A DNA stretch of 63,968 nucleotides, the filler included, from Octopus bimaculoides (Eukaryota), in NCBI RefSeq assembly GCF_001194135.2. It is 5 parts of 4 records of this genome, joined end to end, with 100 filler letters (N's around TTAATTAATTAA, not from the genome) between each part and the next. Parts side by side here need not be neighbours in the genome. Positions count along the whole stretch, not along the records: positions 35,210 to 60,535 come from NC_068984.1; 4 more parts are not named here. One strand, 5' to 3'. The notes below the pieces were generated by a model. It ran no database searches. It saw nothing but the letters and a program-made list of their open reading frames with translations, and had not been told where the DNA came from. A program made the position numbers and the translations under genes. This document shows positions 35,210-60,026 of the stretch, piece by piece. Within the stretch, counting starts at the first letter, position 1, and every line of letters begins with the position of its first letter.

Positions 35210-35704
35210 GGTGGGCTATAAAGGCCGAGTGCGTTTTCAACAGTATATGCCAGGAAAGCGCACAAAATGGGGGATCAAAGTTTGGAAAAGATTTGTGAAT
35301 CAAATACTGGGTACTGCTCTGGATTTTAATTTTATACTGGCAAAAGAGACAGTAATAAATCCAGTAATGTGCACAACTCTTCTATAATAATATTTTGTTG
35401 TATACCCAATTGAATATTAGCTAATGACCCATTTTCTATAGCGATGTTTGAACAAAAATTTAAATAATTTTATATTTTGTTGAATTTACCTGTAATTAAA
35501 GTCACTTTGTGACAAAAATTTTGGTATAGAATTGGTTGAGAACCTTTCGTAAATTTATCTTCCAAAAATCACATTAATATGTTTGATAAATAAAAAAGTT
35601 AGAGTTGTTTAATGAAACCAGCCTAAATTTATGATTATGTTAGAAATTAATTGAAACACATAAGGGGTGTAATTTGGTTAGAAATATGGTAACGAAAGAG
35701 TTAA
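35210..35704 (+). mobile_element. piggyBac derivative, 3' part
   Basis: Near-identical to 48790-49270. Ends tggtaacgaaagag-TTAA. Starts at a scaffold join. Confidence 0.85.
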
Positions 35705-36343
35705 GGTCCTGATTTCATACACTAGTAGGGGTTTTGACTTTTTTTTTTATAACCAGTCATTTTTTGGAGAAAAAGATTACAAGTTTAGAGAGTTAATCTT
35801 ATCCAACCAACCCATACACACCATTGCTTCACTAATGGAAGCTGCCATTTCTGTTTTTGGAACATGACTAATCTGAAATGCACCATTGATCTATTTCAAT
35901 CTGTGCAGTTTTATAATAAGTTCTCTGTACATGTGGCTGTTATAATCAACTGTGGTGTAATGGTTTACTGCCAGCTCCTTTAGAAAAGAAGCATATATGT
36001 GTCAGTTTCTATACAGGCACAAATTTGATGCAGCCTGTCTTCTATTTGCATCAATCAACAGTGGGTAGTACTATTTCATGTTTTACATTCAGCTTCTTCT
36101 GTTGGAAATAGCTTACTGCATCCTCTAGGCTTTTAGATTTTCCCACAATCTTCTCAAATGTTCCATTGGCTGCTATGACATATCAATTTGTGTCATGTTG
36201 AAGGAATGTTTCCGATGGCTAAGATTGCAAAATATTTCCATCTATCCTGCCACTGTTTGACATAAATGCTGTTCCATGTCCTAATAACTTAGTGGTTCAG
36301 CAAAGGAGGTTCATACAGTAAATACCAAACATTGAAAAGTAAT

Positions 36344-36415
36344 CTGCAGATGATGAAATCTTTCACGATGGTCTTCATTACTCTTTGCTGCTGAAGTTAT
36401 CCAGACCTGATGCAG
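36344..36415 (+). ncRNA. Box C/D snoRNA, SNORD35/snR73-like, copy 1
   Basis: Terminal stem ctgca/tgcag, C box ATGATGA, C' CTGCTGA, D CTGA. Guide TTTCACGATGGTCT pairs over 14 nt (two G-U) with conserved LSU rRNA AGACCGUCGUGAGA. Confidence 0.85.
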
Positions 36416-36765
36416 TATTGCTTTATCAAGCTTTCACAAATGAATGTGTTGAGTCAGAAAGTATATTAATTTTGCTTCATTGACAAGATTTCACCATAAT
36501 TGGGAAATGTAACAGTCTTGGATATGGAGGATTACATTTCTTGAATAATTAGTGGAAATATGAGTTTTTGCTTCTTTTTTTTTTTTTTTTTTTTTTTTTT
36601 CCCCCTTCAATTTTTGAAAATTTTCAAATTTGATATGTAGATGTGATTTTTTTTTAATGCTGAACTTGCTTGCTTGTTACAGAGGCTTGAAGTTTGATAA
36701 ATTTTACAGTCAGAAAATAAGATTTGGGAGCTGGCATTTTTATGTGCAATGACATTACAACAAAG

Positions 36766-36890
36766 GGCACTGTCATGGTATTAGCTGTCAGAAGTGAAAG
36801 TAGAACTGACAAGGAACGTTACTGCTGGTTTGAGTTGATTCTTTGGCTACTGACTAGCCGGAGCTATCTATCTGTCTGTCTATCTCACTA

Positions 36891-36923
<33 letters not shown>

Positions 36924-37313
36924 CTATCACTTGTTCACCTCTGTGACTGTAGAATTTATCAAATTAGAAAACGCAAATTTAATATAAAAATATATTTTCT
37001 GAAATTGCAAATTATTTAAAATATAAGAATATAATTTTCAGCAGAGAGAATTTATCAAAATAGAAAACAAATGAAGTTTAAAAATAATAGGATCGAGGAC
37101 TGCGCGTTCGGGACCGCTCTGTGTGTTTTCAAACGCATGGCTATAGGTGTCAAATTTGTTCCAATAACTTTCGAGTGATAGATACAGAGAGAGACAGACA
37201 GATAGCTAGCTCTGGCCAGTCATGGTATTAGCTGTCAGTAGCCAAAGAATCAACTCAAACCAGCAGTAACGTTCCTTGTCAGATTTTTCTACTTTGTCAC
37301 TTCTGACAGTGCC
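36766..37313. mobile_element. MITE with long imperfect TIRs and 8-bp TSD
   Basis: Ends GGCACTGTC/GACAGTGCC flanked on both sides by CAACAAAG. About 130-150 bp of inverted similarity. Confidence 0.8.
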
Positions 37314-37765
37314 CAACAAAGCATTAAACAACGGAAGTTCTTAAGATTTTTCTAAAAAAAATTTTCACCACAGCCTTTGAATTGATGTAAGATGGGTGTG
37401 TTTTTATGAAAAAAATTTGAAAATTTATATTTTTACACCTTGACCATCCCATTTGGTGTCAAATTTCACCAATTTTGTGGAAACTACACATGGGAGAAGC
37501 AAGAGGGTTGGTGTTAGGAAGGGTATCTGGTTGTAAAGACCCTACCAAGGCAGACATTGAAGCATGGTATAGTCTTCTACCACGCCAGCATGAAAAACAG
37601 ATGTTAACTGATGAGTAGCATACAAAACTACATCAATATACCAAATTTGAAATCACTTGGAACAAAATTGAAGTGAAAGGCAAACAGAAAATATCTGAAA
37701 TATGCTAGTGAATTAGTTTATAATAGATAAGCTTGTAATATTTTCAAATGAATATTGAAAGTAAT

Positions 37766-37837
37766 CTGCAGATGATGAAATCTTTCACGATGGTCTTCAT
37801 TACTTTTTGCTGCTGAAGTTATCCAGACCTGATGCAG
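37766..37837 (+). ncRNA. SNORD35-like box C/D snoRNA, copy 2
   Basis: One substitution from copy 1. All boxes, guide and stem intact. Confidence 0.85.
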
Positions 37838-38212
37838 TATTGCTTCATATAGCTTTCTGAAATGAATGTATGGAGTTAGAATACCTAGCATGTGTGTGTA
37901 GTTTCTGAGAAAGTATATAATTTTGCTTCACTGACAAGAGTTCATCTTAATTGTCTGAAAAATGTGTTATTGTATGTTCATTGTAAACAAACATGTATAT
38001 CACCTATTATCTTTGGAATCCTTTCATTGTCACATTCACTATTAAATTTTTACTAAGTGTAAATTGAAATATCTGATTCAAGCATTGTTGTTGAGACTGT
38101 TAGATACCACAATTTTGTAAAAATAAATTATTTCATAATATGTTAAGTATACATCAGGATGTATGGTAATTAGTGGAAATATTCTAGTGAATAAGTTTGA
38201 TGGCTTCAATAC

Positions 38213-38889
38213 TTTTGTTACCATATTTCTAACCAAAATGTGTTTCAATTAATTTCTAACATAATCATAAATTTAGTCTGGTTTCATTAAACAACTCTAA
38301 CGTTTTTATTTATCAACATATTAATGTTATTTTTGGAAGATAATTTAATGAAAGGTTCTCAATCAGTTTTATACCATAATTTTTGTCACAAAGTGACTCT
38401 AATTACAGGTAAATTCAACAAAATATAAAATTATTAAAATTTTTGTTCAAACATCGCTATAGAAATTGGGTTATTAGCTAATACTCAATTAAATATACAA
38501 CAAAATTTTATTATAGAAGAGTTGTGCACATTACTGGATTCGTCAGGTGAATTTAAACACAGAAAGACAGGTGTACCATAAAGGTATAAGTAAAATGAAA
38601 GACTGGAATCTGTCTGAAGAAAACTAGAAAATAAAATACACATACACCATCAACTAGATTAAATAAGCTCTCCCACATACGTAGATACAATAATGATTTA
38701 CAAAAGAAATTAAACAAAATTTGTCACTCTACATAATGCACATTGGAAAGTTGTTTCAACAGCCCTTCCACTAGGAGCTTTCCTTTTTTGATGAAGGCAT
38801 TCGCGACACTGCTTTTTGTGACCCTGGGTTTTTTTTCTAATTTATGGAGATCGGCTGAATTCAGAGGGATATCCCCTTGGCAGGCTTTG

Positions 38890-38921
<32 letters not shown>

Positions 38922-39960
38922 GAATAACCAGCTCTTAGTTGTGTTGCTGCATCTGCACAGAACTGCAGATGGTCGCATAGCTTTCAAGCCTGTCCCGATT
39001 TGGTATATAGTATAAACGCATTAGTAATACTCATATTTACTATATACCAAACCAGGTATCGCCACCATCGATTCCCTGATCTGCCAACTGGATAATAAGG
39101 CATCATCTGATTCAGCCAATCTACACCACCTATGTACCTGTTATAATAGACGTTCACAAATGGCGTGCCATTTTCATCCACATGTGGCTGTGCACAGGTA
39201 GACAAAATTAATCTGCCTCTTATCTCTGTATGTGGTCGCTAGCAAATTTCCTTTCTGCTGTTGAATTATTTCACCTTTTTTTTTTAATTTTGCTTTTTTT
39301 ATATCCAACGGCAGTCCTTTTCTACTAGCGATCACTGTAGCTCATGAATGTGTTGCCACAGTATCTAAATTCTCCGCAAGTTTGGCCGAACTGAAAAATC
39401 AGTCAAAAATTAATATACGGCCCTGGTTATGGTATGGAAGTGATAAATTCCAGACCACATCATACCCTAGGTCATGCTGACTTCTATAATTGTCTCTTTT
39501 GCCAGTATAAAATTCAAATCCAGAGCAGTACCCAGTATTTGATTCACAAATCTTCCAAACTTTGATCCCCCATTTTGTGGGCTTTCCTGGCATATACTGC
39601 CGGAAGCGTACTCTTCCTTTATACCCCACCATGCCCTCATCGACGGATAAGTATCTCAGGCTTGTGAAATGTTTTATATGTGTTTTGAACACAGTCAATG
39701 AGGGGTCTTATTTAAATATAGGATCAAAGTCTGGTTCTCCATGTACTGGTGTACTGCTTGTGTCTCTATGTAAATACTGAGTCAATTTCAAAAATCGTGT
39801 CCTCGTCATTATACTCAAGACATATTCATCTCCTCAGTAATTTATTATTCTGGGTAACTTTCTAATGCCCATGATAATATTTATAGCAAAATATCCTTCA
39901 ATTTCATTTAAGTGGGGAACCACAAACTGTCCTTTCTTACGCTTTGTTTACTTTTTGGGG
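38213..39960 (-). mobile_element. piggyBac (PGBD4-like) transposase relic, less deleted version
   Basis: Fragments LSVDEGMVGYKGRVRFRQYMPGKPTKWGIK, YNRYIGGVDWLNQM..RWWRYL and a decayed Cys-rich tail. The right-end sequence matches the other copies. Confidence 0.9.
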
Positions 39961-40061
39961 GCGGTTTGATAACTAAAAGGTTAGACATGAGATGGTGACT
40001 TAATTGGTATGGTTTATAATAGATGAGCTTGTTATGTTTTTATATGAATGTTGAAAGTAAT

Positions 40062-40133
40062 CTGCAGATGATGAAATCTTTCACGATGGTCTTCATTACT
40101 CTTTGCTGCTGAAGTTATCCAGACCTGATGCAG
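40062..40133 (+). ncRNA. SNORD35-like box C/D snoRNA, copy 3
   Basis: Identical to copy 1 over the 72 nt. Confidence 0.85.
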
Positions 40134-40703
40134 TATTGCTTTATATAGCTTTCGTGTGAAGTGAGCAAGTATATAATTTTGCTTCACAGACAAGATTCCA
40201 TCATGATTGAGATATGTAACATTGTGTGTTCATTGTAAACAAAGAGGTATACCACCTATCATCGTGTTGACAGGTACACTAGTCAATTTATATTCTTCTC
40301 TCTTTTGGAATCACTTGCCATTTTCGCTAAATTTTTTCCATTAATGTAAATTGAAACGTCTGATTTTAGCAAAGTCTGCTTGTCACTAGGATACAACACA
40401 TTTTTAAAAAATAAATCGTTTCATAATGCATTAGAAATTCATTGGGATATATGGTCTTAGATGTTGATACAATTCTTGAATAATTAGTGGAAATTCAGGA
40501 TCTTTTCTGTTTGCCTTCAATTTTTGAAAATCTTCAAATTTGGTATATAAATGTAATTCAAACTGAATTTGGTTCACATCTGAAATATGCTAGTAAATTA
40601 GTTTAATGACTTCAGTGCATTTATTAACATGATATGGTAATGTAATTGGTTAAGTTTATAATAGATAAGCTTGTAATATTTTCAAATGAATATTGAAAGT
40701 AAT

Positions 40704-40775
40704 CTGCAGATGATGAAATCTTTCACGATGGTCTTCATTACACTTTGCTGCTGAAGTTATCCAGACCTGATGCAG
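40704..40775 (+). ncRNA. SNORD35-like box C/D snoRNA, copy 4
   Basis: One substitution in the internal loop. Boxes and guide intact. Confidence 0.85.
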
Positions 40776-41339
40776 TATATTGCTTCATATAGCTTTCTGA
40801 AATGAATGTATGGAGTTGGAGTACCTAGCATGTGTGTGTAGTTTCTGAAAAAGTTTATAATTTTGCTTCACTGACAAGAGTTCATCTTAATTGTCTGAAA
40901 AATGTGTTATTGTATGTTCATTGTAAACAAACAAGTATACCACCAATCATCAAAAATAAGTGTTATCAGGTTCACTAGTCAATTTATATTCCCTCTTGGG
41001 AATCATTTGTCACATTCACTACTAAATTTTTACTATTGAGTGTAAATTGAAACGTCTGATTCAAGTAAAGTCTACCCATTATTGTTGAGTCTGTTGGATG
41101 CCAAATCTGAAGTCTATAATTTGTAAGAGTTAAAGCATCTTATATTTTGTAAAAATAAATTATGTATACATTGCGATGTATAGTCTTTGGATGTGGAGGA
41201 TACAATTCTTGACTAATTAGAAGTAATATTCTAGTGAATTAGTTTGATGGCTTCAATGCTTTTTTTCTTAAAAAAACAAGAGATGGTAACTTAATTGGTA
41301 AGTTTTATAATAGATGAGCTTATGAATATTGAAAGTAAT

Positions 41340-41411
41340 CTGCAGATGATGAAATAGTTCACGATGGTCTTCATTACTCTTTGCTGCTGAAGTTATCCAG
41401 ACCTGATGCAG
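41340..41411 (+). ncRNA. SNORD35-like box C/D snoRNA, copy 5
   Basis: Two substitutions just after the C box (aatagttcacg). Core guide TTCACGATGGTCT and boxes intact. Confidence 0.8.
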
Positions 41412-41424
41412 TATTGCTTTACAT

Positions 41425-42070
41425 GATCTTAATCCTTGCGCATTCAGATTACTTTGAATTAATCGTGCATTATCTTGCAACTTCGAAATTTCAATGATTG
41501 TTTATTTTAAGAATGGCATTGGTTTTAACCCTTTGGCATTTAAACTAACCAGTATCTGGTTTAACACCTACTCTACAATTTCATTCTATAAGTAATCACA
41601 TCATCAGAATGTCACTGTTACTTGATAATGCATAATTAATTAAAAAGTGTGAATAAATGGGCATTGCATTGACTGTAATCTGAAGGTAGAATATTATGGT
41701 TAGTTTAAATGTTGGAGTTATGGATTAAGTTTGAAGGGGGTGTTAAGATATCGCATTGTTTACCAAATGATATTTTTTTAGTTCTATGAAAAGTGAATAT
41801 AGGTTCTGTGTGGTATTGATCATATTATAGTTTATATAAACAGTTCAGTTTCACATATTGCATCACCTTAACATTTTGGTTACTTTGTCAAATGTAATGC
41901 TTATTTATCTTTGAATTAATCATGCATTATCTCGAAGCTTTGAAATGTCAGTGATGTGATTTATTTTTAGAATATTGTTGGGTAGGTTTAAGAGGCCAGA
42001 TCTGGCTGGTTTTAAACAAAACAAGTAGAATATTTGGATTAATATGGCCAGTTTAAATGCTAAAGGATTA
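41425..42070. mobile_element. Cluster of TTAA-type (piggyBac-like) MITE fragments
   Basis: Recurring tcaaatgtaatgcttatttat..gaattaatcatgcattatc..gccagtttaa..ctaaagg(g)ttaa. Further copies near 47445-47530, 50870-50975, 51130-51310, 52565-52735 and 54385-54570. Confidence 0.65.
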
Positions 42071-42287: not shown

Positions 42288-42463
42288 GCATCACCCGCAA
42301 AAGCAGAATTATAGATGTTGTATACAATGCCAGTAATAATGAGCTGGTGAGAATGAAAACTTTGGTAAAAAGTTGCATTGTAACAATTGATGGTACTCCT
42401 TTCCGACAATGGTATGAAGCTCATTATGCTCTGCCTCTGGGTAGGAAAAAAGGCGTGAAATTG
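42288..42463 (+). CDS. RPS8: 40S ribosomal protein S8 (eS8), internal exon, 176 bp
   Basis: tttgcag acceptor and gtaagt donor. Encodes [58 protein letters not shown]. Confidence 0.97.
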
Positions 42464-43259
42464 GTAAGTAATCTTGTACTCTGAACTTCAAAATTAAAAT
42501 GTGGTTGTCATCTATAGTGTTGCGATTTGTAACAACAGTTGAGTTACATGACTGCACTTATATCAAACATTGATATAGTTTTGCATGGTGATGAAAAAAT
42601 TGGATTAATGGTTTTAGCTAGTGCATTACAACCATTTACAGTTATGTAATTTTATGCCTATCAGAAGTCACAACTGACTTTTCATTATTGTTTACCTACA
42701 TGTTGACAATATATGAACGTTACAAAAACTTGAATGTCTTGAAAAGTATTCAAGTGAAGGATGGGGTTTCTCACTTGTGTTAGGCATTTAAAAGTTTTCA
42801 TACCTGAACAAAATCCAACTATACTGTAATAAATAGTATCTCAAATACTTCACCTGTTTTGTCTTGGTGTCAATACATGAGCTTGCAGAGATAGAAATCT
42901 ACTGCCACAATGCCATTTATTCCTTCACTTAAGGCGAGTACTTTCTGTATTTTGAATGTGCGTCCTGTTTTTCAAAGTGGCAAACTTGATACTGTGGCTC
43001 ACCATTCTATGCTGGTATTTCTGGAATATGCAAGTGTACTTGTCAAAGGTTGCTGTTAATCAGTGTTGATGACGGAATCAGTCATCACACCCAGCAATAT
43101 AAAAACAAAACTTTATTTATGAAAAAATCTGTATAGCAACTGGGGTCAAAATCAAAATTTGATTATGACCTTTGGGATCTTGTAATTAGTAAGGACAGTT
43201 TTTACATACCTGCATTGTTGCATATCACAGCTGACTGTACAGGGAATTGTAGTATTCAT

Positions 43260-43351
43260 TTGGAAAGAGATTGCGTGATGAATAATTAAGCCATCTTTCG
43301 GCTGAAATTTAATGTTGTACAATTTTTGAAATTCTGATAATCTCTTTCCAA
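43260..43351 (+). ncRNA. Box C/D snoRNA, SNORD51/SNORD32/snR39-like, copy 1
   Basis: 13-bp terminal stem ttggaaagagatt/aatctctttccaa, C box GTGATGA, D CTGA. Guide CCATCTTTCGG before D' CTGA complements LSU CCGAAAGAUGG. Confidence 0.85.
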
Positions 43352-43839
43352 TAAAGACTTAGGGTAAGTTAATTGACTATTTGAATCTGGAATTTTTTTT
43401 TTTTTTTTTTTTTTTTTTTTCCCCTTTTATTTAATTTCAACAAAACAAGTGGGTGTTCTTGGCTTGCTTTGCTTAGTTCATTTTCAAAGAATCAGTTTTT
43501 ATATTTTGTCATTAATTAGATATGTGTAACTAGTGACGGCAGTAAGGCCTGTCATTTTCATTCGCTAGTTAAAATAAATTACTTATACACAGAGCAGGAT
43601 TTATTGTGGTGTCTCGTCTTAGATCTTGTGACTTCATGTATTTTTGTATTTATTTTGCAGATAGTTTCTATAACACTCTTACTGCTTGTGATTTTCAGAT
43701 CCTATCATGATTTATTCTCTGTGTTCAATTTGTAGTGGTTCAATAAATTGCTGGTTTTTTTTAAATCAAAAATGTTGTTATATCAGTGAATTGAGCATGT
43801 TTGGAACAGAACTGATGACATAAGTATTACACTGGTTTT

Positions 43840-43930
43840 TGGATGGAGACTTTATGATGATTTTTTTAAAGCCATCTTTCGGCTGAACCAGAATGATGTA
43901 TAATTTTCCAAATTCTGATGGTCCCTTCCA
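43840..43930 (+). ncRNA. SNORD51-like snoRNA, copy 2
   Basis: C box ATGATGA, same guide and D', C' ATGATG, D CTGA. Different terminal stem (tggatggagac/gtcccttcca). Confidence 0.8.
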
Positions 43931-44174
43931 AATAGTTTAAAATTTTATGCTAGAGGAAGAACTTGGTAGTCACTTTATATTGTCCTCAGTTCCCTGTGTT
44001 GCATTGTTATTAAAATGGGAATTTGTTTAGAAGTCAACTGGATATAAATTAGATTCTATTTTTATATTGTTACAAGAGAGCTTTTGTGTTTTGTGGCCAA
44101 TGAGGTTGTCTTCAAATTAGGGGGAGAAATCATCTTTGTTTATACAAATACGTGTTTGAAATGTCTGTATTTTG

Positions 44175-44264
44175 CCAAAAGCAGAATGATGAACATATAA
44201 ACTGTAATTGCTAGTTGTATAGTCATGATGCCAGTATGTCATAGTTACACTGACTGCTTTTTGG
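44175..44264 (+). ncRNA. Box C/D snoRNA, SNORD46(U40/U46)-like, copy 1
   Basis: Stem ccaaaagcag/ctgctttttgg and C box ATGATGA. Guide GTCATAGTTAC-A-CTGA complements LSU GUAACUAUGAC. Confidence 0.85.
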
Positions 44265-44360
44265 TATATTTTTCTGAAACATTTCTTCCACATTTGACTT
44301 AGTTTGTTTGAACAAGAAAAAGTTTTGTCATGCTTTGTTTATTCAAATACAGTTTGCTTG

Positions 44361-44447
44361 CCAAAAGTAGAATGATGAATATATATATATATATGCTAAA
44401 TGTTTGGTCTGATACCAGTATGTCATAGTTACTTAGGCTGTGTTTGG
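44361..44447 (+). pseudogene. Decayed SNORD46-like copy
   Basis: C box and guide GTCATAGTTAC retained, but D box replaced by TTAG and terminal stem eroded. Confidence 0.7.
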
Positions 44448-44453
44448 TATGTT

Positions 44454-45850
44454 TTTGTTACCATATTTCTAACCAAATTACACCCCTTATGTGTTTCAAT
44501 TAATTTCTAACATAATCATAAATTTAGTCTGGTTTCATTAAACAACTCTAACGTTTTTATTTATCAACATATTAATGTTATTTTGTGGAAGATAATTTAA
44601 CGAAAGGTTCTCAACCAATTCTATACCAAAATTTTTGTCACAAAGTGACTCTAATTACAGGTAAATTCAACAAAATATAAAATTATTTAATTTTTGTTCA
44701 AACATTGCTATAGAAAATGGGTTATTAGCTAATATTCAATTGGGTATGCAACAAAATATTATAGAAGAGTTGTGCACATTACTGGATTCATTACTGTCTC
44801 TTTTGCCAGTATAACATTCAAATCCAGAGCAGTACCCACTATTTGATTCACAAATCTTCCAAACGTGGGCTTTCCTGGCATATATTGTCGAAAACGCACT
44901 CTGCCTTTATAGCCCACCATATCCTCATCTATAAACTGTTTTATATGTGTTTTGAACACAGTCAATGAGGGGTCTTATTATAAATAAGGGATCAAAGTCT
45001 GGTTTTCCACGTACTGCTCGTGTCTATTACATGTAGATATTGAGTTAATTTTAAAAACCGTATCCTCATCATTATACTTGAGACATATTCGTCTCCAAAG
45101 GGTTCATCACTACTCCAGTAATTTGTTATTCTAGGTAACTTTCTAATGCCCATAATATTTATGGCAAAATATGCCTTAATTTCATTCAAGTTTGTGGGAA
45201 ACCACAAACTATCCTTTTTTACNNNNNNNNNNNNNNNNNNNNNNNNNNNNNNNNNNNNNNNNNNNNNNNNNNNNNNNNNNNNNNNNNNNNNNNNNNNNNN
45301 NNNNNNNNNNNNNNNNNNNNNNNNNNNNNNNNNNNNNNNNNNNNNNNNNNNNNNNNNNNNNNNNNNNNNNNNNNNNNNNNNNNNNNNNNNNNNNNNNNNN
45401 NNNNNNNNNNNNNNNNNNNNNNNNNNNNNNNNNNNNNNNNNNNNNNNNNNNNNNNNNNNNNNNNNNNNNNNNNNNNNNNNNNNNNNNNNNNNNNNNNNNN
45501 NNNNNNNNNTCTTTTTTTTTTTTTTTGCAGTTACAGAGTTAGATTTATCAAGGTCTTCAACGGAAGATCCTTCGAGTTCTGACTCTGCTTGACAGAATAA
45601 AATTCGTAACCATTTTTTTGTCAGGATTACAAATTTTGAAAACACAACAGGATTACAAATATTGAAAAAAATCTCTCAAAATTCACAAAATTAAAAAAAC
45701 ACGTCGATCGTCATACAAAACTATAGCTGAACTGTTTACACAAATATTCACGTGTTTTCACGAATGTACTAACGAGATTTGCTTGGATATTCTCATTTAA
45801 ATATGAATAGGTGATTACGGGTGGTTTTGGGCGGTTTGGTAACGAAAGGG
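44454..45850 (-). mobile_element. Non-autonomous piggyBac inside an RPS8 intron
   Basis: Left end CCCTTTCGTTACC next to TTAA (45851-45854). Transposase remnants FAINIMGIRKLPRITNYWS and MVGYKGRVRFRQYMPGKP. Right end decayed at about 44454. Confidence 0.9.
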
Positions 45851-45899
45851 TTAAACCAGAAAAGTTTGTGCTTTGTTTAGACAAATACAATTTTATTTG

Positions 45900-45990
45900 C
45901 CAAAAGCAGAATGATGACCATATATATGCTGTAGTAGCTAAATGTTTAGCTATGGTGCCAGTATGTCATAGTTACACTGACTGCATTTGG
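45900..45990 (+). ncRNA. SNORD46-like snoRNA, copy 3
   Basis: Stem ccaaaagcag/ctgcatttgg, C box ATGATGA, guide GTCATAGTTACA and D CTGA intact. Confidence 0.85.
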
Positions 45991-46330
45991 TATAATTCTT
46001 GATGTTTTTCCTCTCCTCCTCTTCCTCAGTTGGTCTTTATTCAGGATGGGTGCAGAGTAAGCTTCCTCCAGAAATATTACCTTTTCATTCAACTTTAAGA
46101 TAGATGTTGAGGACTCCATTGAATCTAGATAGCAACAGATTTTTTTTTTTTTCTGCATAATTATTCTGAAATATTGTTCACACATTTATTATGGAGGGTT
46201 GTGCATATCATTACTTCACCATTTTTCTAATGTCTGGGTGGTGATTTTCCATGTGATGTTTGGTAGAAATCTGTTTTGTGTATAATGATTGTGACCTGGT
46301 TTAATGTATATTTTGTTAAAACCTTTATAG

Positions 46331-46460
46331 ACAGAACAAGAAGAATCTGTTCTTAACAAAGTGCGTTCACGGAAAAATCAAAGAAAATACACATTACGGC
46401 GAAAGACAGCTAAAGTTGAACCAGCTCTTCAAGAAGAATTCATGACTGGTCGATTATTAG
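46331..46460 (+). CDS. RPS8: RPS8 internal exon, 130 bp
   Basis: tatag acceptor and gtaagt donor. Encodes TEQEESVLNKVRSRKNQKKYTLRRKTAKVEPALQEEFMTGRLL, in phase with neighbours. Confidence 0.95.
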
Positions 46461-46805
46461 GTAAGTATTATTTTGCATGTTTCGGTCATTGAGTTGCAAC
46501 TATGCTGCAGTGCCTCATTCAAGAGTTCTTTTTAGTCGAACAAACTCCACTGCTTATCAGTCTCTTACATTTTTATTTTGACTGAGTTGCTGATTTACTG
46601 GAGCATAAGCAAATGCATATACGTGTGCATATGCATGTTTTGTATAGTGACATTGCTGTGTTTGGTATCATGTATCTATACAGCAACTGAGGTCAAAACA
46701 AATCTAATTGTTAGCATTAGAGTTTTGTGAAAGGGTAATTGTGTTAAGTACTTGCACTGATGCAAATCACAGCTGACTGACTATGGAGAATTGGGGTATA
46801 TTTGT

Positions 46806-46898
46806 TTGGGATAGAGATTCTATGATGAATAATTAAGCCATCTTTCGGCTGAAATTTAATGTTGTACAAATTTCAAAATTCTGATAATCTCTTTCCAA
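46806..46898 (+). ncRNA. SNORD51-like snoRNA, copy 3 (last RPS8 intron)
   Basis: Nearly identical to 43260-43351 including boxes, guide and terminal stem. Confidence 0.85.
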
Positions 46899-47157
46899 TT
46901 ATGAATTATGCTAAGTTAATTGATAGAGAATTTGAATGAATTAGAAGTGTGGTATATCTGCATGAGTAGTTATGCTTGACATAACCTGATTTAACTTTGA
47001 AGAATTTTGATTATATAGATACGTGTTTCACTATAAATTTGTGTAGTGCCATTGATAGAGCATTTTGTAAAACGATTTGTTGAACAATCTAAATTAGGAA
47101 ATGTAGTGGGGGTTTTTTTTCTGTTTATTAAAGGTTTTTTTTTATTATTCTTTGCAG

Positions 47158-47267
47158 CAAAAATCACTTCACGACCAGGTCAATATGGTAAATCCGATGG
47201 TATTGTACTTGAAGGAAAAGAACTTGAATTTTATATGAGGAAGATCAAGGCGAAGAAAGGGAAATAG
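47158..47267 (+). CDS. RPS8: RPS8 terminal coding exon
   Basis: tttgcag acceptor. Encodes (A)[35 protein letters not shown] followed by TAG. Confidence 0.97.
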
Positions 47268-47394: not shown

Positions 47395-47635
47395 GCACAA
47401 TTGTTAAGTGATATGATTCTCTTGTAATTATTTGGTATCAGTATTCCTTTAACCCCTTAGTGTTTTAACTGGTTGAAACTGGCCAGATCTGCCTCCTCAT
47501 ACTTATCCTACAATGTTAACACTTTCATTACTGTATTTCTAACCAAAATATACCCCTTATGTATTTCAATTATTTCTAAAATAGTCATAAATTTGAACTG
47601 GTTTCATTAAAAAAACATATTTCTCAACATGTTAA

Positions 47636-49266
47636 CCCTTTCGTTACCAAACCGCCCAAAGCCGCCCGAAAAAAAATTTGGTTCATGTGACCAAGCTGCC
47701 CAAAACCGCCCGTAATCACCTATTCATATTTAAATGAGAATATCCAAGCAAATCTCATTAGTACATTCGTGAAAATACGTGATTATTTGTGTAAACAGTT
47801 CAGCAATAGTTTTGTACGACGGTCAACGTGTTTTTTTAATTTTGTGAATTTTGGGAGATTTTTTTCCAAATTTGTTCCTGTTGTGTTTTCAAAATTTGTA
47901 ATCCTGACAAAAAAATGGATACGAATTTTATTCTGTCAAGCAGCGAGTCAGAATTCGAAGGATTTTCCGTTGAAGACCTTGATAAATCTAACTCTNNNNN
48001 NNNNNNNNNNNNNNNNNNNNNNNNNNNNNNNNNNNNNNNNNNNNNNNNNNNNNNNNNNNNNNNNNNNNNNNNNNNNNNNNNNNNNNNNNNNNNNNNNNNN
48101 NNNNNNNNNNNNNNNNNNNNNNNNNNNNNNNNNNNNNNNNNNNNNNNNNNNNNNNNNNNNNNNNNNNNNNNNNNNNNNNNNNNNNNNNNNNNNNNNNNNN
48201 NNNNNNNNNNNNNNNNNNNNNNNNNNNNNNNNNNNNNNNNNNNNNNNNNNNNNNNNNNNNNNNNNNNNNNNNNNNNNNNNNNNNNNNNNNNNNNNNNNNN
48301 NNNNNNNNNNNNNNNNNNNNNNNNNNNNNNNNNNNNNNNNNNNNNNNNNNNNNNNNNNNNNNNNNNNNNNNNNNNNNNNNNNNNNNNNNNNNNNNNNNNN
48401 NNNNNNNNNNNNNNNNNNNNNNNNNNNNNNNNNNNNNNNNNNNNNNNNNNNNNNNNNNNNNNNNNNNNNNNNNNNNNNNNNNNNNNNNNTGAGGTTTCCC
48501 ATAAACTTGAATGAAATTAAAGCATATTTTGCCATAAATATTATTATGGGCATTAGAAAGTTACCTAGAATAACAAATTACTGGAGTAGTGATGAACCCT
48601 TTGGCGACGAATATGTCTCAAGTATAATGACGAGGATACGGTTTTTAAAATTGACTCAATATCTACATGTAAGAGAACGAGCAGTACACCAGTACGTGGA
48701 AAACCAGACTTTGATCCCTTATTTAAAATAAGACCCCTCATTGACTGTGTTCAAAGCACATATAAAACAGTTTATAGATAAGGATATGGTAGGCTATAAA
48801 GGCCGAGAGCGTTTTCAACAGTATATGCCAGGAAAGTGCACAAAATGGGGGATCAAAGATTTGTGAATCAAATACTGGGTATTGCTCTGGATTTTAATTT
48901 TATACTGGCAAAAGAGACAGTAACAAATCCAGTAATGTGCACAACTCTTCTATAATAATATTTTGTTGTATACCCAATTGAATATTAGCTAATGACCCAT
49001 TTTCTATAGCGATGTTTGAACAAAAATTTTAATAATTTTATATTTTGTTGAATTTACCTGTAATTAAAGTCACTTTGTGACAAAAATTTTGGTATAGAAT
49101 TGGTTGAGAACCTTTCGTTAATTTATCCTCCAAAAATCACATTAATATGTTGATAAATAAAAAAGTTTGAGTTGTTTAATGAAACCAGCCTAAATTTATG
49201 ATTATGTTAGAAATTAATTGAAACACATAAGGGTGTAATTTGGTTAGAAATATGGTAATGAAAGGG
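47636..49266 (+). mobile_element. Complete non-autonomous piggyBac with TTAA TSDs
   Basis: TTAA-CCCTTTCGTTACCA ... TGGTAATGAAAGGG-TTAA. Internally deleted transposase, same derivative as 44454-45850. Confidence 0.95.
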
Positions 49267-49289: not shown

Positions 49290-50850
49290 TTTAACGAAAG
49301 GTTCTCAACCGATTCCATTCCATAATTTTGGTCTCTAATTACTGTTAAATTCAACAAAATATAGAATTAAGTTTTGTTCAAACATCACTATAGAAAGCAG
49401 GTTATTTACTAATATTCAATTAGGTATGCAACAAAATTTTACTATAGCGGAATTGTGCACATTACTGGAGTTATTGGCTGAATTTAAACGCAAAAGACAG
49501 GGTATAAATAGAACGAAATACTGGAAGTTGTCTGAAGAAACCTAGAAAATAAAATGCACACCATCAACTGGATGAAATAGACTCTCCCACAGAAACATAC
49601 AATAATGATTTACAAAAGAAATTAATCATAATTCGTGACTCACCTTACAAGCAAACTAAAATTAGAGATAAAGACAATAAAAATGAAGTAAATTTGAAAA
49701 TATTTATAAATTCAAATCTTACAATATTCCTGTCATGAAAACTTGTAAAGCACCCTGCTCTACATAATGCAACCTTGTAGGATGCACATTAGAAAGCTGT
49801 TTCACTTCCACTGGGGCCTTTTTTTTTTTTATGTTGGCATTTGTGACGATCGGCTGAATTCAGAGGCATATTCTTCTGGCAGGTTTTGATTTCCATCCCA
49901 ACTTTTTTTTCTTTCTTTCTTTGTGGAATGACCAGCTCTCAACTGTGTTGCTATATCTGCTCGGAACTGCATATTTGAGCGGATCCTGATTTGGTATATA
50001 GTATAAATGCATTAACAATACTCATATTTACTATACACCAAACCAGGTTATCACCGCCATTTCATTCCCCTGTCTGCCAACTGGATAGTAAGACATCAGC
50101 TGATCTACACTACCCAGGTACCTATTATAATCCAGGTTCACAAATGCCATTTTCATCCACATGTGGTTGTGCATGGGTAGATAGAAACTTGATCTGCTTC
50201 TTATCTCGATGTGGTCGCTGGCAGATTTCCTCTCTGCCGTTGAATTGTTTCACTTTTTTTTATATCCACACAGCATCTAAATTCTCTACAAGTTTGACCA
50301 AACTGGAAAACCAGTCGAAAAAATCATATATGACACTGGTTATGGTATAGAAATGATGAATTCCAGACCACATCATATCATAGGCTGTGCTGACTTACTC
50401 GGCCTTTATAGCCTACCATACCCTCTTCAATGGTTTGTAAAATGTTTCATGTGTTTTGTACACAGTCAATGAGGAGTTGTATTTTAAATAAAATACGGAT
50501 CAAAGTATTGGTTCTCCACTTACTGCTCATATCTCACACATGTAAATACTGTCCTCATTATAGTTGAGACATACTCCGTCTCCAAAGGATTCATTGCTAC
50601 TCCAGTAATTTATAATTCTGGGTAGCTTTCTAAAGCCCATATTAATATTCATGGCAAATTATGCTCCAATTTCATCTACGTTTGTGGGGAACCATAAGCT
50701 ATCCTTTTCTTCACAAGTTAATATATCATGTTGGAAACTATAACTCATTTGTTTATGAAGTGGAATCACGTGTTTTCATGGCTGTAATAACAAGATATGC
50801 GCTGATATTCTCATTTAAATATGAATGTGATTACGGGCGGTTTTGTAAAG
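49290..50850 (-). mobile_element. Older, more diverged piggyBac copy
   Basis: Collinear with 38300-39960 and with the left-end sequence (attctcatttaaatatgaat..gtgattacggg). Many indels. Confidence 0.8.
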
Positions 50851-52015
50851 AAATTGTTAATCTAAAAGTAAATTATTCATAAAAGTCTTGAAGCTATGAG
50901 ATAATACATAGTTAATTCAAAACTGAATAAATAAGCATTGCATCTAACAGAGTAATCTGAATGCTAAAGGGTTAAGGCAGTGATTCTCAGCTGGGATCCA
51001 TGAAAAAATTTTGCCATAGATGTATTTATTGCAAGAAACGACTGTTTCTTTAACGTTTTGCGTGGTTCAACTTGCACAATACTCCAGGAAAAACAGTAAA
51101 TTTTAGAAGAAGTATGTATAAAACTAGTTTTTAACCCATTAGTATTCAGGTTAGTTCGTGAGTGTAATGCTTATTTATTCACATTGTCTTGAATTAATCA
51201 TGCATTATCTTAGCTTTGAAATTTCAATGGTGTGATTGCTTATTTTTAGAATGACATTTTAGGGTAGGTGTGAGAGGCCATATGTGGCCAGTGTGAATAC
51301 TAATGAGTTAAATATCAAATTACTTTGAGTGTCGACTACACTATCCATGACCTGTTGGGTCACCTGGAAAGTCTGCATTTCCCAACAAAGTAGTTTCATG
51401 GGTTTTTCTTTTCACATGCTTTCAACATGACATTCAAATCATGCATAAATGGCTCCTTTCCCCGGGAAAGGAAAGATTTGGCTGCTATTTCTTGCATGCC
51501 CTGTTACCATGTAACAGGTATTTCGGGTCCTTTATCACAAATAGCTGTTACTTGGTAGCAGGGCATGCTAAATAACAGCCAAATCTTTGGAGCTGAATGC
51601 ACTTAGGAAAACATTTTTCTAATTGTATTCCCTTGGGACAATCTTTTGCTTTGACTCTCAGAACTTTCAGCTTGTTTTGTTCGTTAATTTCCGTAAAAAA
51701 AATTTTTGTAAGTGACGATGTAGAGAGTGCCATTTGCACACGTTCACTCTCTCTTGCACATGTACATACAAAGATCTATGCATATGTACATGTACATACA
51801 TCTTTCACTTTAAAATAAATAGGAAATTTATGAAAATTGACGAACTCCAGAGAGTCAAAGTGAAAGGTCCCCATTCGCTTGGGAAAAAAACCATTAAAAT
51901 ATTGTGTTTAAAGAAAGCTAAAATATAAATACTTACTATACAAACTTACATTTTTGAAATCACACTCAGTTACACAATATTTCTAAATGATTACAATGTT
52001 GTGTATGTCAAGTCG

Positions 52016-53225: not shown

Positions 53226-53762
53226 CTAAGGTTGATGAAAAGTTGGGTAACATATGCAGCCTTAATGATGAGGCTAAGTACTGCTTTTATTCTGGAATAA
53301 GCATCTCATTTGTGAAATGACAAGTTTTGTTTATCTTATAAAATATTTAATTTCCAGAATGAAATGGGAAATGTTGCCAGCCCAATTTCAGAGACAGCCT
53401 TGTGTTGGTGCATTATATAAAAACAGCTATTTGAGTTATTTTGAATTCTGTAAAGTTAAATTCATAGTTACTCCATGTCCTAAACAACCATATATATGCG
53501 GCAGTACCTTTTGTTTTGAACAACTCTGATCATGAATAAATTGTGCTTTGTATATATATAGATATATATAAAGCATGATTTATTCGTGATCAGAGGCGTT
53601 CATAAACCGAGGTACTATTGTATTAAATGAATATGAGAGAGACAGGAGATAAAGTAAGATTTATTCATGATCAAAGTTGTTCAAAAACTGATGTTCTACT
53701 ATATATATATATTTATTCGAGATTTTTTTTTTTTTTTTCACTCTCCACTTAAAATGGCAAAC

Positions 53763-58492: not shown

Positions 58493-59544
58493 CTGTCCAG
58501 CAATAATTAAAATTCGAGAATAAATGACATGAAGTAAGAAATCCCAATTTTATAACACAACCATACATTTACAGTAGAACAATAACAAACGACCAAAAAG
58601 CATCAAAAACCAATGTAAAGAAAGAAAATGCAGGAGCATATCGTAATAATTACATAAAAGCTTTACTGGTCACCAGTTTTGTCAGTACAATAAATTCTGA
58701 TTTACTTATACATTTTGTGCCAAATCAGTTGTGTTCATAGGTATGTCTGTATGTTTAATTTGTATGTAATGTGTATTTACATACATAAAATCTTACATCT
58801 ATCAAATACAGTAGTTTCAGTAAAAAGACTCAATCCCTATATTTCAAAGAATTAAAATAGCAATTAGCATATTCCCCTATGTCTAGTTAATAAATCAGAA
58901 TTAATGTGGCATAAGAGCTGCATACTCAGCAAGTATTCAATATATGGCAGTCAATTTGCAATATTTTACAATGTGCAAAAATAAAATTAAATCAAAAAAA
59001 AAAAAAAATTCAATATAATAATTTAAATTTTTCATACAAAGGATATCTAAACAAAATTATAATTCTAATAAAAAATACTAAAATACCAGTAATCTCACTC
59101 TTTCACAATTAACAATTAATTTCACATCTCTCCCCATTTTCAATGATACTTACATGTAAGTTTTCAAACTAATTTTGTCCACTTATAATTTTATAACTTC
59201 TGTAACCTTATGAATGTTTGAAAATTTTTTCCATAGCAAAGTTCCTCAAGTTTTCCTTAGCCTTTTTACACTTTGAAAACCAAAAGGATGGCTTGGACAG
59301 TTATTGGTACCGGTCCCACTTTGGTGTAAATCATGACTTATGCTGTTACTTTCACTCAAGCCACATGCACACACTTGTGTTAACTTGCACACCTTAGTGA
59401 GATCAGTTGCACAAACATAAAGAGTCATTCACTCAATGCCTGGATGAAAAAAAAAAATTAAACAAATATATGTTTATGTGAAAAATATCTCTGTGAGCAT
59501 CTCTTAATTTTCCTTTTTTTTTTTTTTTTATATTACATTCACCT

Positions 59545-59624
59545 TCAGAATCGCATTTTGTGTATCTTTAATATTCTTCCAAGTCGCTGTTTGGCAGTGG
59601 CAAATCCCTTCTTAGGTTTCTTGG
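59545..59624 (-). CDS. Candidate last coding exon of an unidentified basic-tailed protein
   Basis: Long pyrimidine tract plus attag acceptor. Encodes KKPKKGFATAKQRLGRILKIHKMRF*. gtgaat donor 2 nt after the stop. A further strong acceptor at 59439 starts a stop-rich (UTR-like) exon. Confidence 0.6.
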
Positions 59625-60026
59625 CTAATTGATGAAAGAGAAAAAGAGAAATATGTCAATGAATGAATTCAATAAATATTTAAGTAAATTTTCATTATAT
59701 TGAAGGTGAAATCCTTATTGTATTTTGATTCCTATAATTGTTCAGTCCTGGTTGAACAACTCTTATTTCAATCACAGGTTGGCCACCTCTAATGTGGCAT
59801 CTTAGGAATTAACCTAATTTGACAAATTATATCTGTGTGTTTGTGCCCCCTACCCCTTTCTTTCTCATGTTAAGTGTGCAGAAGTTGGTGTATTCATTGA
59901 ATATGAACAGAGAAAGAAATTACTTGTTAAATAGAGACATAAAGAGAAATAGCTACAAGATTACATAAACCTATGTAATGTAACAGAAAAGTAATAGTAT
60001 CATTTTATCAGTGTGGAGTTAATATT

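What the first reader, a model, noticed from the sequence alone, without database searches (positions are those of the whole stretch)
43260..45990. One RPS8 intron holds five C/D snoRNA copies of two families
Seen: between exons ending 42463 and starting 46331 lie two SNORD51-like and three SNORD46-like copies, each intact copy closed by a long (about 10-13 bp) terminal stem. Known: the guides correspond to LSU Am sites of human SNORD51/32 (yeast Am807) and SNORD46 (yeast Am2256). Vertebrate intronic snoRNAs are released by exonucleolytic trimming of one lariat per snoRNA, whereas yeast and plant polycistrons use RNase III cleavage. Inference: this animal uses a polycistronic intronic arrangement, and the long stems may be the processing determinants.
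Basis: partly seen in the sequence, partly recalled or inferred. Interest (0 to 1): 0.7.

Follow-up and report, generated by a model that had tools for sequence, protein, structure and literature searches.

The report
Octopus RPS8 intron snoRNA cluster
One intron of the octopus ribosomal-protein S8 gene really does carry several small RNA genes that guide ribosomal RNA methylation, each closed by a long stem; the layout is shared by other cephalopods and molluscs but is of a kind already described in fruit flies and rice.

Summary
The window is Octopus bimaculoides chromosome CM046604.1 (100% identical). RPS8 intron 4 (42464-46330) holds two SNORD51/Me28S-Am982-like and two intact SNORD46-like box C/D units. 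A third SNORD46-like copy has lost its D box. Each intact unit is closed by an 11-14 bp flank stem.

The assembly gap lies inside a piggyBac-like transposon that is absent from the gap-free O. sinensis and O. vulgaris loci. It does not affect the finding.

The pattern reaches beyond the finding. Intron 3 holds five SNORD35-like units and intron 5 one more SNORD51-like unit. Argonauta and Sepia carry the same families in the same introns. Between Octopus and Argonauta, only exons and snoRNA units are conserved. Multi-copy introns also occur in a bivalve and a snail RPS8.

Flank stems differ in sequence between copies but always pair: mean -14.6 kcal/mol against -6.2 for non-cognate flanks.

Best reading: a conserved intronic snoRNA gene cluster evolving by tandem duplication and decay. 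External stems probably permit snoRNP assembly far from the 3' splice site. How single snoRNAs are released is unknown. There are no expression data.

Intronic clusters are already known from rice and Drosophila, so this is a new member of a known kind. Interest is modest.

The parts
42288..42463 (+). RPS8 exon 4 (residues 72-129)
   Evidence: tblastn and translation. Identical to Octopus RPS8 P0121.
42464..46330 (+). RPS8 intron 4, GT...AG, 3867 nt including an estimated 287-N gap. Hosts the five units of the finding.
43260..43351 (+). SNORD51/Me28S-Am982-like C/D unit, copy 1. C box at 43275, D' guide GCCATCTTTCGG+CTGA at 43290-43305, D box at 43334. 13 bp perfect flank stem plus one G-U pair.
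   Evidence: Rfam 38.3 bits, E 0.0026. Stem -18.7 kcal/mol, 0 of 300 controls as good. Fold.
43839..43932 (+). SNORD51-like C/D unit, copy 2. C box at 43854, D box at 43915. 12 bp stem with two mismatches.
   Evidence: Rfam 29.3 bits. Stem -14.5 kcal/mol. Fold.
44174..44265 (+). SNORD46-like C/D unit, copy 1. C box at 44186, guide TGTCATAGTTACA, D box at 44250. 12 bp stem with one bulge.
   Evidence: Rfam SNORD46 29.5 bits; guide plus D box 17/17 identical to the consensus. Stem -14.8 kcal/mol.
44360..44449 (+). Defective SNORD46-like copy. C box and guide are kept, the D box is lost, and no closing stem forms. Also defective in O. sinensis and O. vulgaris.
44453..45856 (-). piggyBac-like transposon fragment (DDE_Tnp_1_7) inserted in the spacer. 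Contains the assembly gap 45223-45509. Absent from the sister species.
45899..45991 (+). SNORD46-like C/D unit, copy 3. C box at 45911, D box at 45977. 11 bp stem with one mismatch. The D box lies 350 nt upstream of the 3' splice site.
   Evidence: Rfam 25.6 bits. Stem -14.4 kcal/mol. Fold z-score -2.2.
46331..46460 (+). RPS8 exon 5 (residues 130-173)
46806..46898 (+). Third SNORD51-like C/D unit, alone in intron 5 (46461-47157). 13 bp stem.
   Evidence: Rfam 36.5 bits. Stem -13.4 kcal/mol. Motif match.
47158..47267 (+). RPS8 last exon, with stop codon
36330..41426 (+). Array of five SNORD35-like C/D units in intron 3. C box to D box: 36350-36410, 37772-37832, 40068-40128, 40710-40770, 41346-41406. 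Each has a 14-18 bp bulged flank stem. The array is interrupted by older transposon fragments.
   Evidence: Rfam SNORD35 30.8-33.3 bits against gathering 36. Stems -11.7 to -16.7 kcal/mol. Transposon fragments.

Best explanation
This is a conserved intronic box C/D snoRNA gene cluster in the Octopus bimaculoides RPS8 gene.

RNA polymerase II transcribes the host gene. Intron 4 carries SNORD51/32-type guides, predicted to direct 2'-O-methylation of the LSU site equivalent to human 28S Am1524. It also carries SNORD46-type guides for the H69 loop site equivalent to human Am3739/3760. Introns 3 and 5 carry SNORD35-type and a further SNORD51-type guide.

The copies arose by local tandem duplication and turn over by birth and death. 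Some decay, and transposons insert between them.

The units lie hundreds to thousands of nucleotides from the 3' splice site. That is outside the position where C/D snoRNP assembly is coupled to splicing in vertebrates. Each unit instead carries a long external stem that brings its C and D boxes together, so the core proteins can assemble independently of position. This step is inferred.

Single snoRNAs must then be freed from a multi-unit intron. The likely route is cleavage within the spacers of the pre-mRNA or the debranched lariat, followed by exonucleolytic trimming up to the protein-protected stems. This step is also inferred, and the nuclease is unknown.
For: Shown:
- Boxes, guides and stems are present at the stated coordinates and are far beyond chance.
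- Guide segments match the SNORD46 and Me28S-Am982/SNORD51 consensus.
- The window is O. bimaculoides.
- The same families sit in the same introns in O. sinensis, O. vulgaris, Argonauta hians and Sepia pharaonis.
- Between Octopus and Argonauta, blastn finds only the exons and the snoRNA units conserved within the introns, at 74-87% identity. This indicates purifying selection on the units.
- For 21 units with different flank sequences, the cognate 5'/3' flank duplex averages -14.6 kcal/mol against -6.2 for non-cognate pairs. The cognate partner ranks first in 18 of 21, and 0 of 20000 permutations reach the observed total. Pairing is kept while the sequence changes.
- One Argonauta SNORD35-like copy has TGCA/TGCA changed to AACA/TGTT, two double compensatory changes.
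- The defective copy has lost both its D box and its stem.
- A Sepia transcript contig joins exon 4 directly to exon 5 across the three-snoRNA intron.
- Units 262 nt or more from the 3' splice site have stems of -9 to -21 kcal/mol. The Sepia SNORD46 copy 83 nt from the splice site has none: -4.9, equal to random.

From the literature:
- Long external stems make C/D assembly splicing-independent, and the optimal site is about 50 nt upstream of the branch point (PMC5519232).
- Intronic clusters are known in rice and Drosophila (PMC2780460).
- Human SNORD46 is hosted in RPS8 (PMC11495440).
Against: - There are no RNA data for octopus, so expression and ends of individual copies are unknown.
- All Rfam scores are below the gathering thresholds.
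- Copy number varies, and several copies are decayed in the sister species. Not every copy is needed, and some intact-looking ones may be silent.
- The stem-versus-distance trend rests on three near-splice-site units. One of them (Sepia SNORD35-like, 90 nt) still has a -11.8 kcal/mol stem.
- No spacer structure or motif points to a specific endonuclease.
Confidence: 0.7

Rival explanations
1. Redundant duplicates. Only one copy per family, or one per intron, is productively made. The others are silent by-products of tandem duplication on their way to decay.
For: A defective SNORD46-like copy is shared by three Octopus species. In O. sinensis and O. vulgaris two of the SNORD51-like copies have a C box changed to ATGATAA and a guide G-to-A change, and one SNORD35-like copy is truncated. 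Copy numbers differ between species.
Against: Two different families with different rRNA targets share intron 4 in all five cephalopods. At least two distinct snoRNAs must therefore come from this intron, unless other genomic copies exist. Intact paralogs keep boxes, guide and stem while their internal non-guide sequence diverges. Multiple units are conserved between Octopus and Argonauta against a background of unalignable intron.
Confidence: 0.12
2. Hidden exons or alternative splicing. Minor, possibly NMD-targeted, isoforms use internal splice sites so that each snoRNA is excised in its own smaller intron, as proposed for human multi-snoRNA host genes.
For: Human hosts of multiple snoRNAs make many alternative, NMD-sensitive isoforms that allow differential snoRNA expression (PMC4233243). 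One strong donor-like motif (TTAGG|GTAAGT) lies at 43364, just after SNORD51-like copy 1, and GGTAAG is kept in O. sinensis.
Against: Only two GTRAGT motifs exist in the whole intron, the real 5' splice site and 43364, whereas four or more internal donors would be needed. No spacer block is conserved between Octopus and Argonauta. The gene models and the Sepia transcript contig splice the intron as one piece. Weak or non-consensus sites cannot be excluded without RNA-seq.
Confidence: 0.1
3. sno-lncRNA production. Exonucleases stop at the outermost snoRNPs, so the main stable products are long intron fragments capped by snoRNAs at both ends rather than individual snoRNAs.
For: Two snoRNAs in one intron give sno-lncRNAs in mammals (PMC11028025). 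The arrangement here meets that structural precondition.
Against: Guides for universally conserved rRNA methylations are under selection in every unit. That argues for mature guide snoRNAs. Spacers are unconserved and tolerate transposon insertion.
Confidence: 0.05
4. Independent transcription units. Each unit has its own promoter inside the intron, as reported for many nematode snoRNAs.
For: An 18-nt motif, CTTTGTTTATACAAATAC, precedes each SNORD46-like unit in Octopus.
Against: The motif is absent from Argonauta and Sepia, so it is most simply a duplicated flank. Conservation between genera stops about 20 nt outside the boxes, at the stem.
Confidence: 0.03

Closest known systems
Intronic snoRNA gene clusters of rice and Drosophila melanogaster (Liang et al. 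2002; Huang et al. 2004, 2005; cited through PMC2780460 and PMC2246290)
   Same: Two or more snoRNA genes, often paralogous isoforms, lie within a single spliceosomal intron of a host gene that is frequently a ribosomal-protein gene. They depend on host transcription.
   Different: The taxon is a cephalopod mollusc, for which I found no description. Here every distal unit carries a long external stem. I could not read the primary papers, so a detailed comparison of stems and spacing was not possible.
Human SNORD46 in RPS8 (one snoRNA per intron)
   Same: Same guide element: 17/17 nt including the D box against the Rfam consensus. Same host gene (PMC11495440). Same predicted target, the H69 loop Am (PMC8677024).
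   Different: By the one-snoRNA-per-intron rule for vertebrates (PMC11028025), human SNORD46 is taken here to sit alone in its intron; this was not checked directly. Octopus has two intact copies plus one dead copy, sharing the intron with SNORD51-like units 350-2077 nt from the 3' splice site. Scores are below the Rfam gathering threshold.
Vertebrate intronic C/D snoRNAs with long external stems (splicing-independent assembly; Hirose, Shu and Steitz 2003, summarised in PMC5519232)
   Same: Extended pairing of the sequences flanking the C and D boxes, in units that lie far from the optimal position upstream of the branch point.
   Different: The function of the stems was not tested here. The stems are longer and are found on all units far from the 3' splice site in several lophotrochozoans.
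Yeast polycistronic and intronic snoRNAs processed by RNase III (Rnt1p, including the external-stem-dependent release of U18 and snR38; own knowledge) and S. pombe Pac1 (PMC12508059)
   Same: Several snoRNAs lie on one precursor, and a stem is formed by the flanks.
   Different: No dedicated spacer hairpins were found: spacer folds have z-scores of +0.75 and -1.2. Involvement of RNase III is pure conjecture here.
sno-lncRNAs (mammalian introns holding two snoRNAs; PMC11028025)
   Same: More than one snoRNP-forming unit in one intron.
   Different: Accumulation of the intervening RNA is unknown. The spacers are unconserved.

Membership tests
Box C/D snoRNA | C box RUGAUGA near the 5' end and D box CUGA near the 3' end | tested here: met
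   All four intact units in the finding, and the unit in intron 5, have GTGATGA or ATGATGA and CTGA. The copy at 44360-44449 lacks the D box.
Box C/D snoRNA | Terminal stem that brings the C and D boxes together | tested here: met
   Stems of 11-14 bp at -14.4 to -18.7 kcal/mol. They close the minimum-energy and centroid folds. Cognate against non-cognate flank test.
Box C/D snoRNA | Antisense element of 10 nt or more ending next to D or D', placing the target nucleotide opposite the fifth position | tested here: inconclusive
   The guides equal the Rfam consensus guides of SNORD46 and Me28S-Am982/SNORD51. The fifth position is U in both, which predicts Am. Octopus rRNA was not available to pair directly.
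Box C/D snoRNA | Accumulates as a stable RNA of about 70-100 nt bound by fibrillarin, Nop56, Nop58 and Snu13 | not testable with these tools
   No RNA or protein data.
Rfam SNORD46 (RF00218) | Score at or above the curated gathering threshold (40 bits) | tested here: not met
   29.5 and 25.6 bits; Argonauta 31.5 and 26.1. The loss of score lies in the non-guide interior. Guide and host gene match, so I call these SNORD46-like, probably orthologous, and not Rfam members.
Rfam SNORD51 / snoMe28S-Am982 (clan CL00054) | Score at or above gathering (50 / 49 bits) | tested here: not met
   38.3, 36.5 and 29.3 bits; Argonauta SNORD51 39.5. The D' guide CCAUCUUUCG plus CUGA is shared.
Intronic snoRNA gene cluster | Two or more snoRNA genes within one spliceosomal intron of a host gene | tested here: met
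   Exon borders. Gene models span a single intron. The homologous Sepia intron is removed as one piece in a transcript contig.
Intronic snoRNA gene cluster | All members are expressed from the host transcript | not testable with these tools
   No octopus RNA data. Conservation is indirect support only.
RNase III-processed polycistronic snoRNA precursor (yeast type) | Dedicated stem-loops in the spacers that serve as RNase III substrates | tested here: not met
   Spacers 43353-43839 and 43933-44169 fold no better than shuffles, with z-scores of -1.19 and +0.75. Only the external stems of the units themselves are structured.

The most novel reading that the evidence does not exclude
Cephalopods, and perhaps molluscs generally, may resolve multi-snoRNA introns by a cleavage pathway directed by the long external stems. 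For example, an RNase III-type or other endonuclease might be recruited by the assembled snoRNP, as for yeast U18 and snR38. That would be a polycistron-type processing route working inside animal introns. It might act alongside stable snoRNA-capped intron fragments.
Probability: 0.2. Interest if true: 0.55.

Novelty: new member of a known kind. Interest (0 to 1): 0.3.

Why it matters
It documents intronic snoRNA gene clusters, an exception to the one-snoRNA-per-intron habit of vertebrates, in a lophotrochozoan lineage where I found no description.

It shows that the SNORD46-RPS8 host association is shared by human, molluscs and a brachiopod.

It also offers a natural series for asking how several snoRNAs are freed from one intron, and whether external stems compensate for position in the intron. 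The series contains paralogs with long stems far from the splice site and a stemless copy at the canonical distance in Sepia.

None of this overturns current models.

Tried and rejected
- The Rfam gathering-threshold scan found nothing. The units appear only in the E-value scan.
- The search for the N-terminal RPS8 exons in the piece was negative. The piece starts inside intron 3; the exons lie upstream of an assembly gap in the chromosome record.
- RNAalifold on a MAFFT alignment of 12 SNORD51-like units did not recover the terminal stem, because the divergent flanks were misaligned and some were truncated. A column-diagonal scan was ambiguous for the same reason and because bulges differ. 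I replaced both with per-unit duplex energies, using random and non-cognate controls.
- The primary papers on Drosophila and rice clusters are not held, so I cite them through papers that describe them.
- No literature on cephalopod snoRNA organisation was found.
- A conserved upstream motif as an independent promoter was rejected, because it is Octopus-specific.
- Dedicated RNase III hairpins in the spacers were rejected on the fold z-scores.
Full report
**What is there**

The piece carries the 3' half of a ribosomal protein S8 gene on the + strand. The exons are 42288-42463, 46331-46460 and 47158-47267, with canonical GT...AG borders. The 137-residue translation is 100% identical to RPS8 of Octopus bimaculoides, O. 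vulgaris and O. sinensis, and 97% identical to that of Argonauta hians.

The window is 100% identical, gap included, to O. bimaculoides chromosome CM046604.1 of assembly GCA_001194135.2 (locus L008). In that record the first coding exons lie upstream of another assembly gap. This explains why I could not find them in the piece. The piece starts inside intron 3.

**The observation**

- Two SNORD51/Me28S-Am982-like units, at 43260-43351 and 43839-43932.
- Three SNORD46-like units, at 44174-44265, 44360-44449 and 45899-45991.

The middle SNORD46-like copy keeps its C box and guide but has lost its D box. Its flanks no longer pair in the predicted fold.

The guide motifs occur three times each in the window, against 0.01 expected by chance. 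No unit reaches an Rfam gathering score. In the E-value scan they hit SNORD46 (29.5 and 25.6 bits; threshold 40) and snoMe28S-Am982 (38.3 and 29.3; threshold 49). The alignment shows the guide plus box segment identical to the consensus: UGUCAUAGUUACACUGA for SNORD46, and CCAUCUUUCG followed by one base and CUGA for the other family.

Published assignments place human SNORD46 at 28S Am3739/3760 in the H69 loop, and SNORD32A/B and SNORD51 at Am1524 (PMC8677024, PMC11550049). The fifth guide position upstream of D or D' is U in both families, which predicts an Am. I could not pair the guides with octopus rRNA itself, and I did not test the yeast numbering.

**The stems**

For every intact unit I took the 22 nt before the C box and the 24 nt after the D box. 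These form 11-14 bp duplexes at -14.4 to -18.7 kcal/mol in the finding's intron, against about -5 to -7 with random intronic 24-mers. The stem closes the unit in the minimum-energy and centroid folds of all intact units, but not of the defective copy.

**The gap**

The Ns at 45223-45509 lie inside a minus-strand piggyBac-like transposon fragment (Pfam DDE_Tnp_1_7, E 5e-17), spanning about 44453-45856. Two other young copies of the same element carry an assembly gap at the homologous internal place. One is at 47632-49258. The other is at the start of the piece, continuing beyond the preceding gap in L008. The gap is therefore a systematic failure to assemble the interior of the element.

In the gap-free loci of O. 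sinensis and O. vulgaris the transposon is absent. There the defective copy and the last SNORD46-like copy are 199 nt apart guide to guide, instead of 1543 nt. The two sides of the gap therefore belong to one intron. The gap can hide only transposon sequence. Reading frame is irrelevant here.

**Beyond the finding's coordinates**

The same habit holds in the neighbouring introns. Intron 3 carries five SNORD35-like units (C boxes at 36350, 37772, 40068, 40710 and 41346; 30.8-33.3 bits against 36), each with a 14-18 bp bulged stem. Intron 5 carries one further SNORD51-like unit (46806-46898).

**Comparison with relatives**

- Argonauta hians (L001, no gaps) has six SNORD35-like units and one SNORD51-like unit in intron 3. 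It has four SNORD51-like and two SNORD46-like units in intron 4.
- Between the window and Argonauta, blastn finds only the exons (80-85% identity) and the snoRNA units (74-87%). The rest of the introns is unalignable. This is the signature of selection on the units.
- It also argues against conserved hidden exons.
- O. sinensis and O. vulgaris keep the same order in intron 4. One extra SNORD51-like pseudo-copy is present, and two SNORD51-like copies are weakened by a C box changed to ATGATAA and a guide G-to-A change.
- Sepia pharaonis (L010) has one SNORD35-like unit each in introns 2 and 3 and a SNORD51-like unit in intron 1. Intron 4 holds one SNORD51-like and two SNORD46-like units.
- A spliced Sepia transcript contig from a public run joins exon 4 directly to exon 5. 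That three-snoRNA intron is therefore removed as one intron in the main mRNA.
- Outside cephalopods, the bivalve Potamilus has three SNORD51-like units in intron 4 and one SNORD46-like unit in the last intron.
- The snail Biomphalaria has two SNORD46-like units in its last intron. Haliotis and the brachiopod Lingula have one each.
- Human SNORD46 also sits in RPS8 (PMC11495440). This host association is shared by human, molluscs and a brachiopod.

**Are the stems selected?**

I took 21 units with different flank sequences, from nine loci and three families.
- Cognate 5'/3' flank duplexes average -14.6 kcal/mol, against -6.2 for non-cognate pairings.
- The cognate partner ranks first in 18 of 21 cases.
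- None of 20000 permutations reaches the observed total.

Stem sequences differ completely between lineages. Examples are TTGGAAAGAGATT in Octopus, GTGGTTGT...AGTTA in Sepia and AACAGGCAT in Potamilus. Pairing is always kept. One Argonauta SNORD35-like copy has changed the inner stem from TGCA/TGCA to AACA/TGTT, two double compensatory changes.

**How it most likely works**

Shown: the genomic arrangement, its conservation, and the selected stems. Everything about RNA processing is inferred.

In vertebrates C/D snoRNP assembly is coupled to splicing, and the preferred position is about 50 nt upstream of the branch point. Long external stems that help the snoRNA fold make assembly splicing-independent (PMC5519232).

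Here all Octopus and Argonauta units lie 262-5877 nt from the 3' splice site, and all have long stems. In Sepia the SNORD46-like copy 83 nt from the 3' splice site has no stem beyond chance (-4.9 kcal/mol). A SNORD35-like copy at 165 nt has -7.4. A third copy at 90 nt still has -11.8. In Biomphalaria the copy about 75 nt from the splice site has only a 4 bp stem by eye. The trend fits the compensation model but rests on few, related units.

Exonucleolytic trimming of one debranched lariat would leave the outer snoRNPs joined, as in mammalian sno-lncRNAs (PMC11028025). Cleavage within the spacers is therefore needed to release single snoRNAs. I see no dedicated hairpins in the two spacers I folded (z-scores +0.75 and -1.19). 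That precedent is my own knowledge, and the idea is untested here.

**Rivals**

(a) Only one copy per family or per intron is expressed. Decayed copies and varying copy number support redundancy. Against it, two families with different targets share intron 4 in all five cephalopods.

(b) Hidden exons or alternative splicing, as proposed for human multi-snoRNA hosts (PMC4233243). Against it, only two GTRAGT motifs exist in the intron, the true 5' splice site and one at 43364. No spacer block is conserved. The Sepia transcript splices the intron in one piece. RNA-seq is needed to exclude this rival.

(c) sno-lncRNAs as the main product.

(d) Independent promoters. The only repeated upstream motif is Octopus-specific.

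**Novelty**

[quoted passage not shown] Reviews list them as a recognised category in animal genomes, beside the predominant one-snoRNA-per-intron rule (PMC11028025). Long external stems are also known (PMC5519232).

I found no description for cephalopods or other molluscs. This is therefore a new member of a known kind. It is well supported at the genomic level and moderately interesting for snoRNA evolution and biogenesis. It does not surprise in principle.

Noticed in passing
window 36330-41426: Five nearly identical SNORD35-like C/D units lie in RPS8 intron 3. Besides the SNORD35-type guide (CACGATGGTC) they share a second antisense element, GTTATCCAGAnCTGA. It is conserved in Octopus, Argonauta and Sepia, and I did not identify its target.
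   Followed up: partly
window 46806-46898: A third intact SNORD51-like unit sits alone in intron 5. In O. sinensis and O. vulgaris the homologous copy has lost its C and D boxes.
   Followed up: yes
window 44453-45856, 47632-49258, 35210-35697; older fragments 38213-38541, 39491-39986, 50397-50845: There are several copies of one piggyBac-like element. The three young copies each carry an assembly gap at the same internal position. This suggests an interior segment that the assembler could not resolve; a T-run borders the gap at 45510-45527.
   Followed up: partly
window 43359-43369: A strong 5' splice-site-like motif, TTAGG|GTAAGT, lies 12 nt after SNORD51-like copy 1. It is the only GTRAGT in the intron apart from the real donor. 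GGTAAG is kept at the same place in O. sinensis. Possible meanings are a cryptic donor, a U1 binding site or a chance remnant of the duplicated unit.
   Followed up: partly
window 51483-51577 and 53510-53610: Near-perfect palindromic hairpins hit several plant and animal miRNA models on both strands, far below the gathering scores. They are probably inverted repeats of transposons rather than miRNA genes.
   Followed up: no
L003 5700-6460, L005 3229, L006 20882-35505, L002 28369: SNORD46-like guides sit in an RPS8 intron in a snail, an abalone, a bivalve and a brachiopod, as in human. This snoRNA-host association is shared by human, molluscs and a brachiopod. The bivalve also has three SNORD51-like copies in one 18 kb intron.
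   Followed up: partly
L010 7000-7148 and 5040-5130: In Sepia the SNORD46-like copy 83 nt from the 3' splice site has no extended stem. Its paralog 2037 nt away has a split stem of about 16 bp. This is a natural contrast for testing whether stems compensate for position.
   Followed up: partly
window 58640-59626: Blocks conserved with the region downstream of Argonauta RPS8, where a minus-strand JmjC/PHD gene is annotated. Gene order around RPS8 appears to be kept between the two octopods.
   Followed up: no
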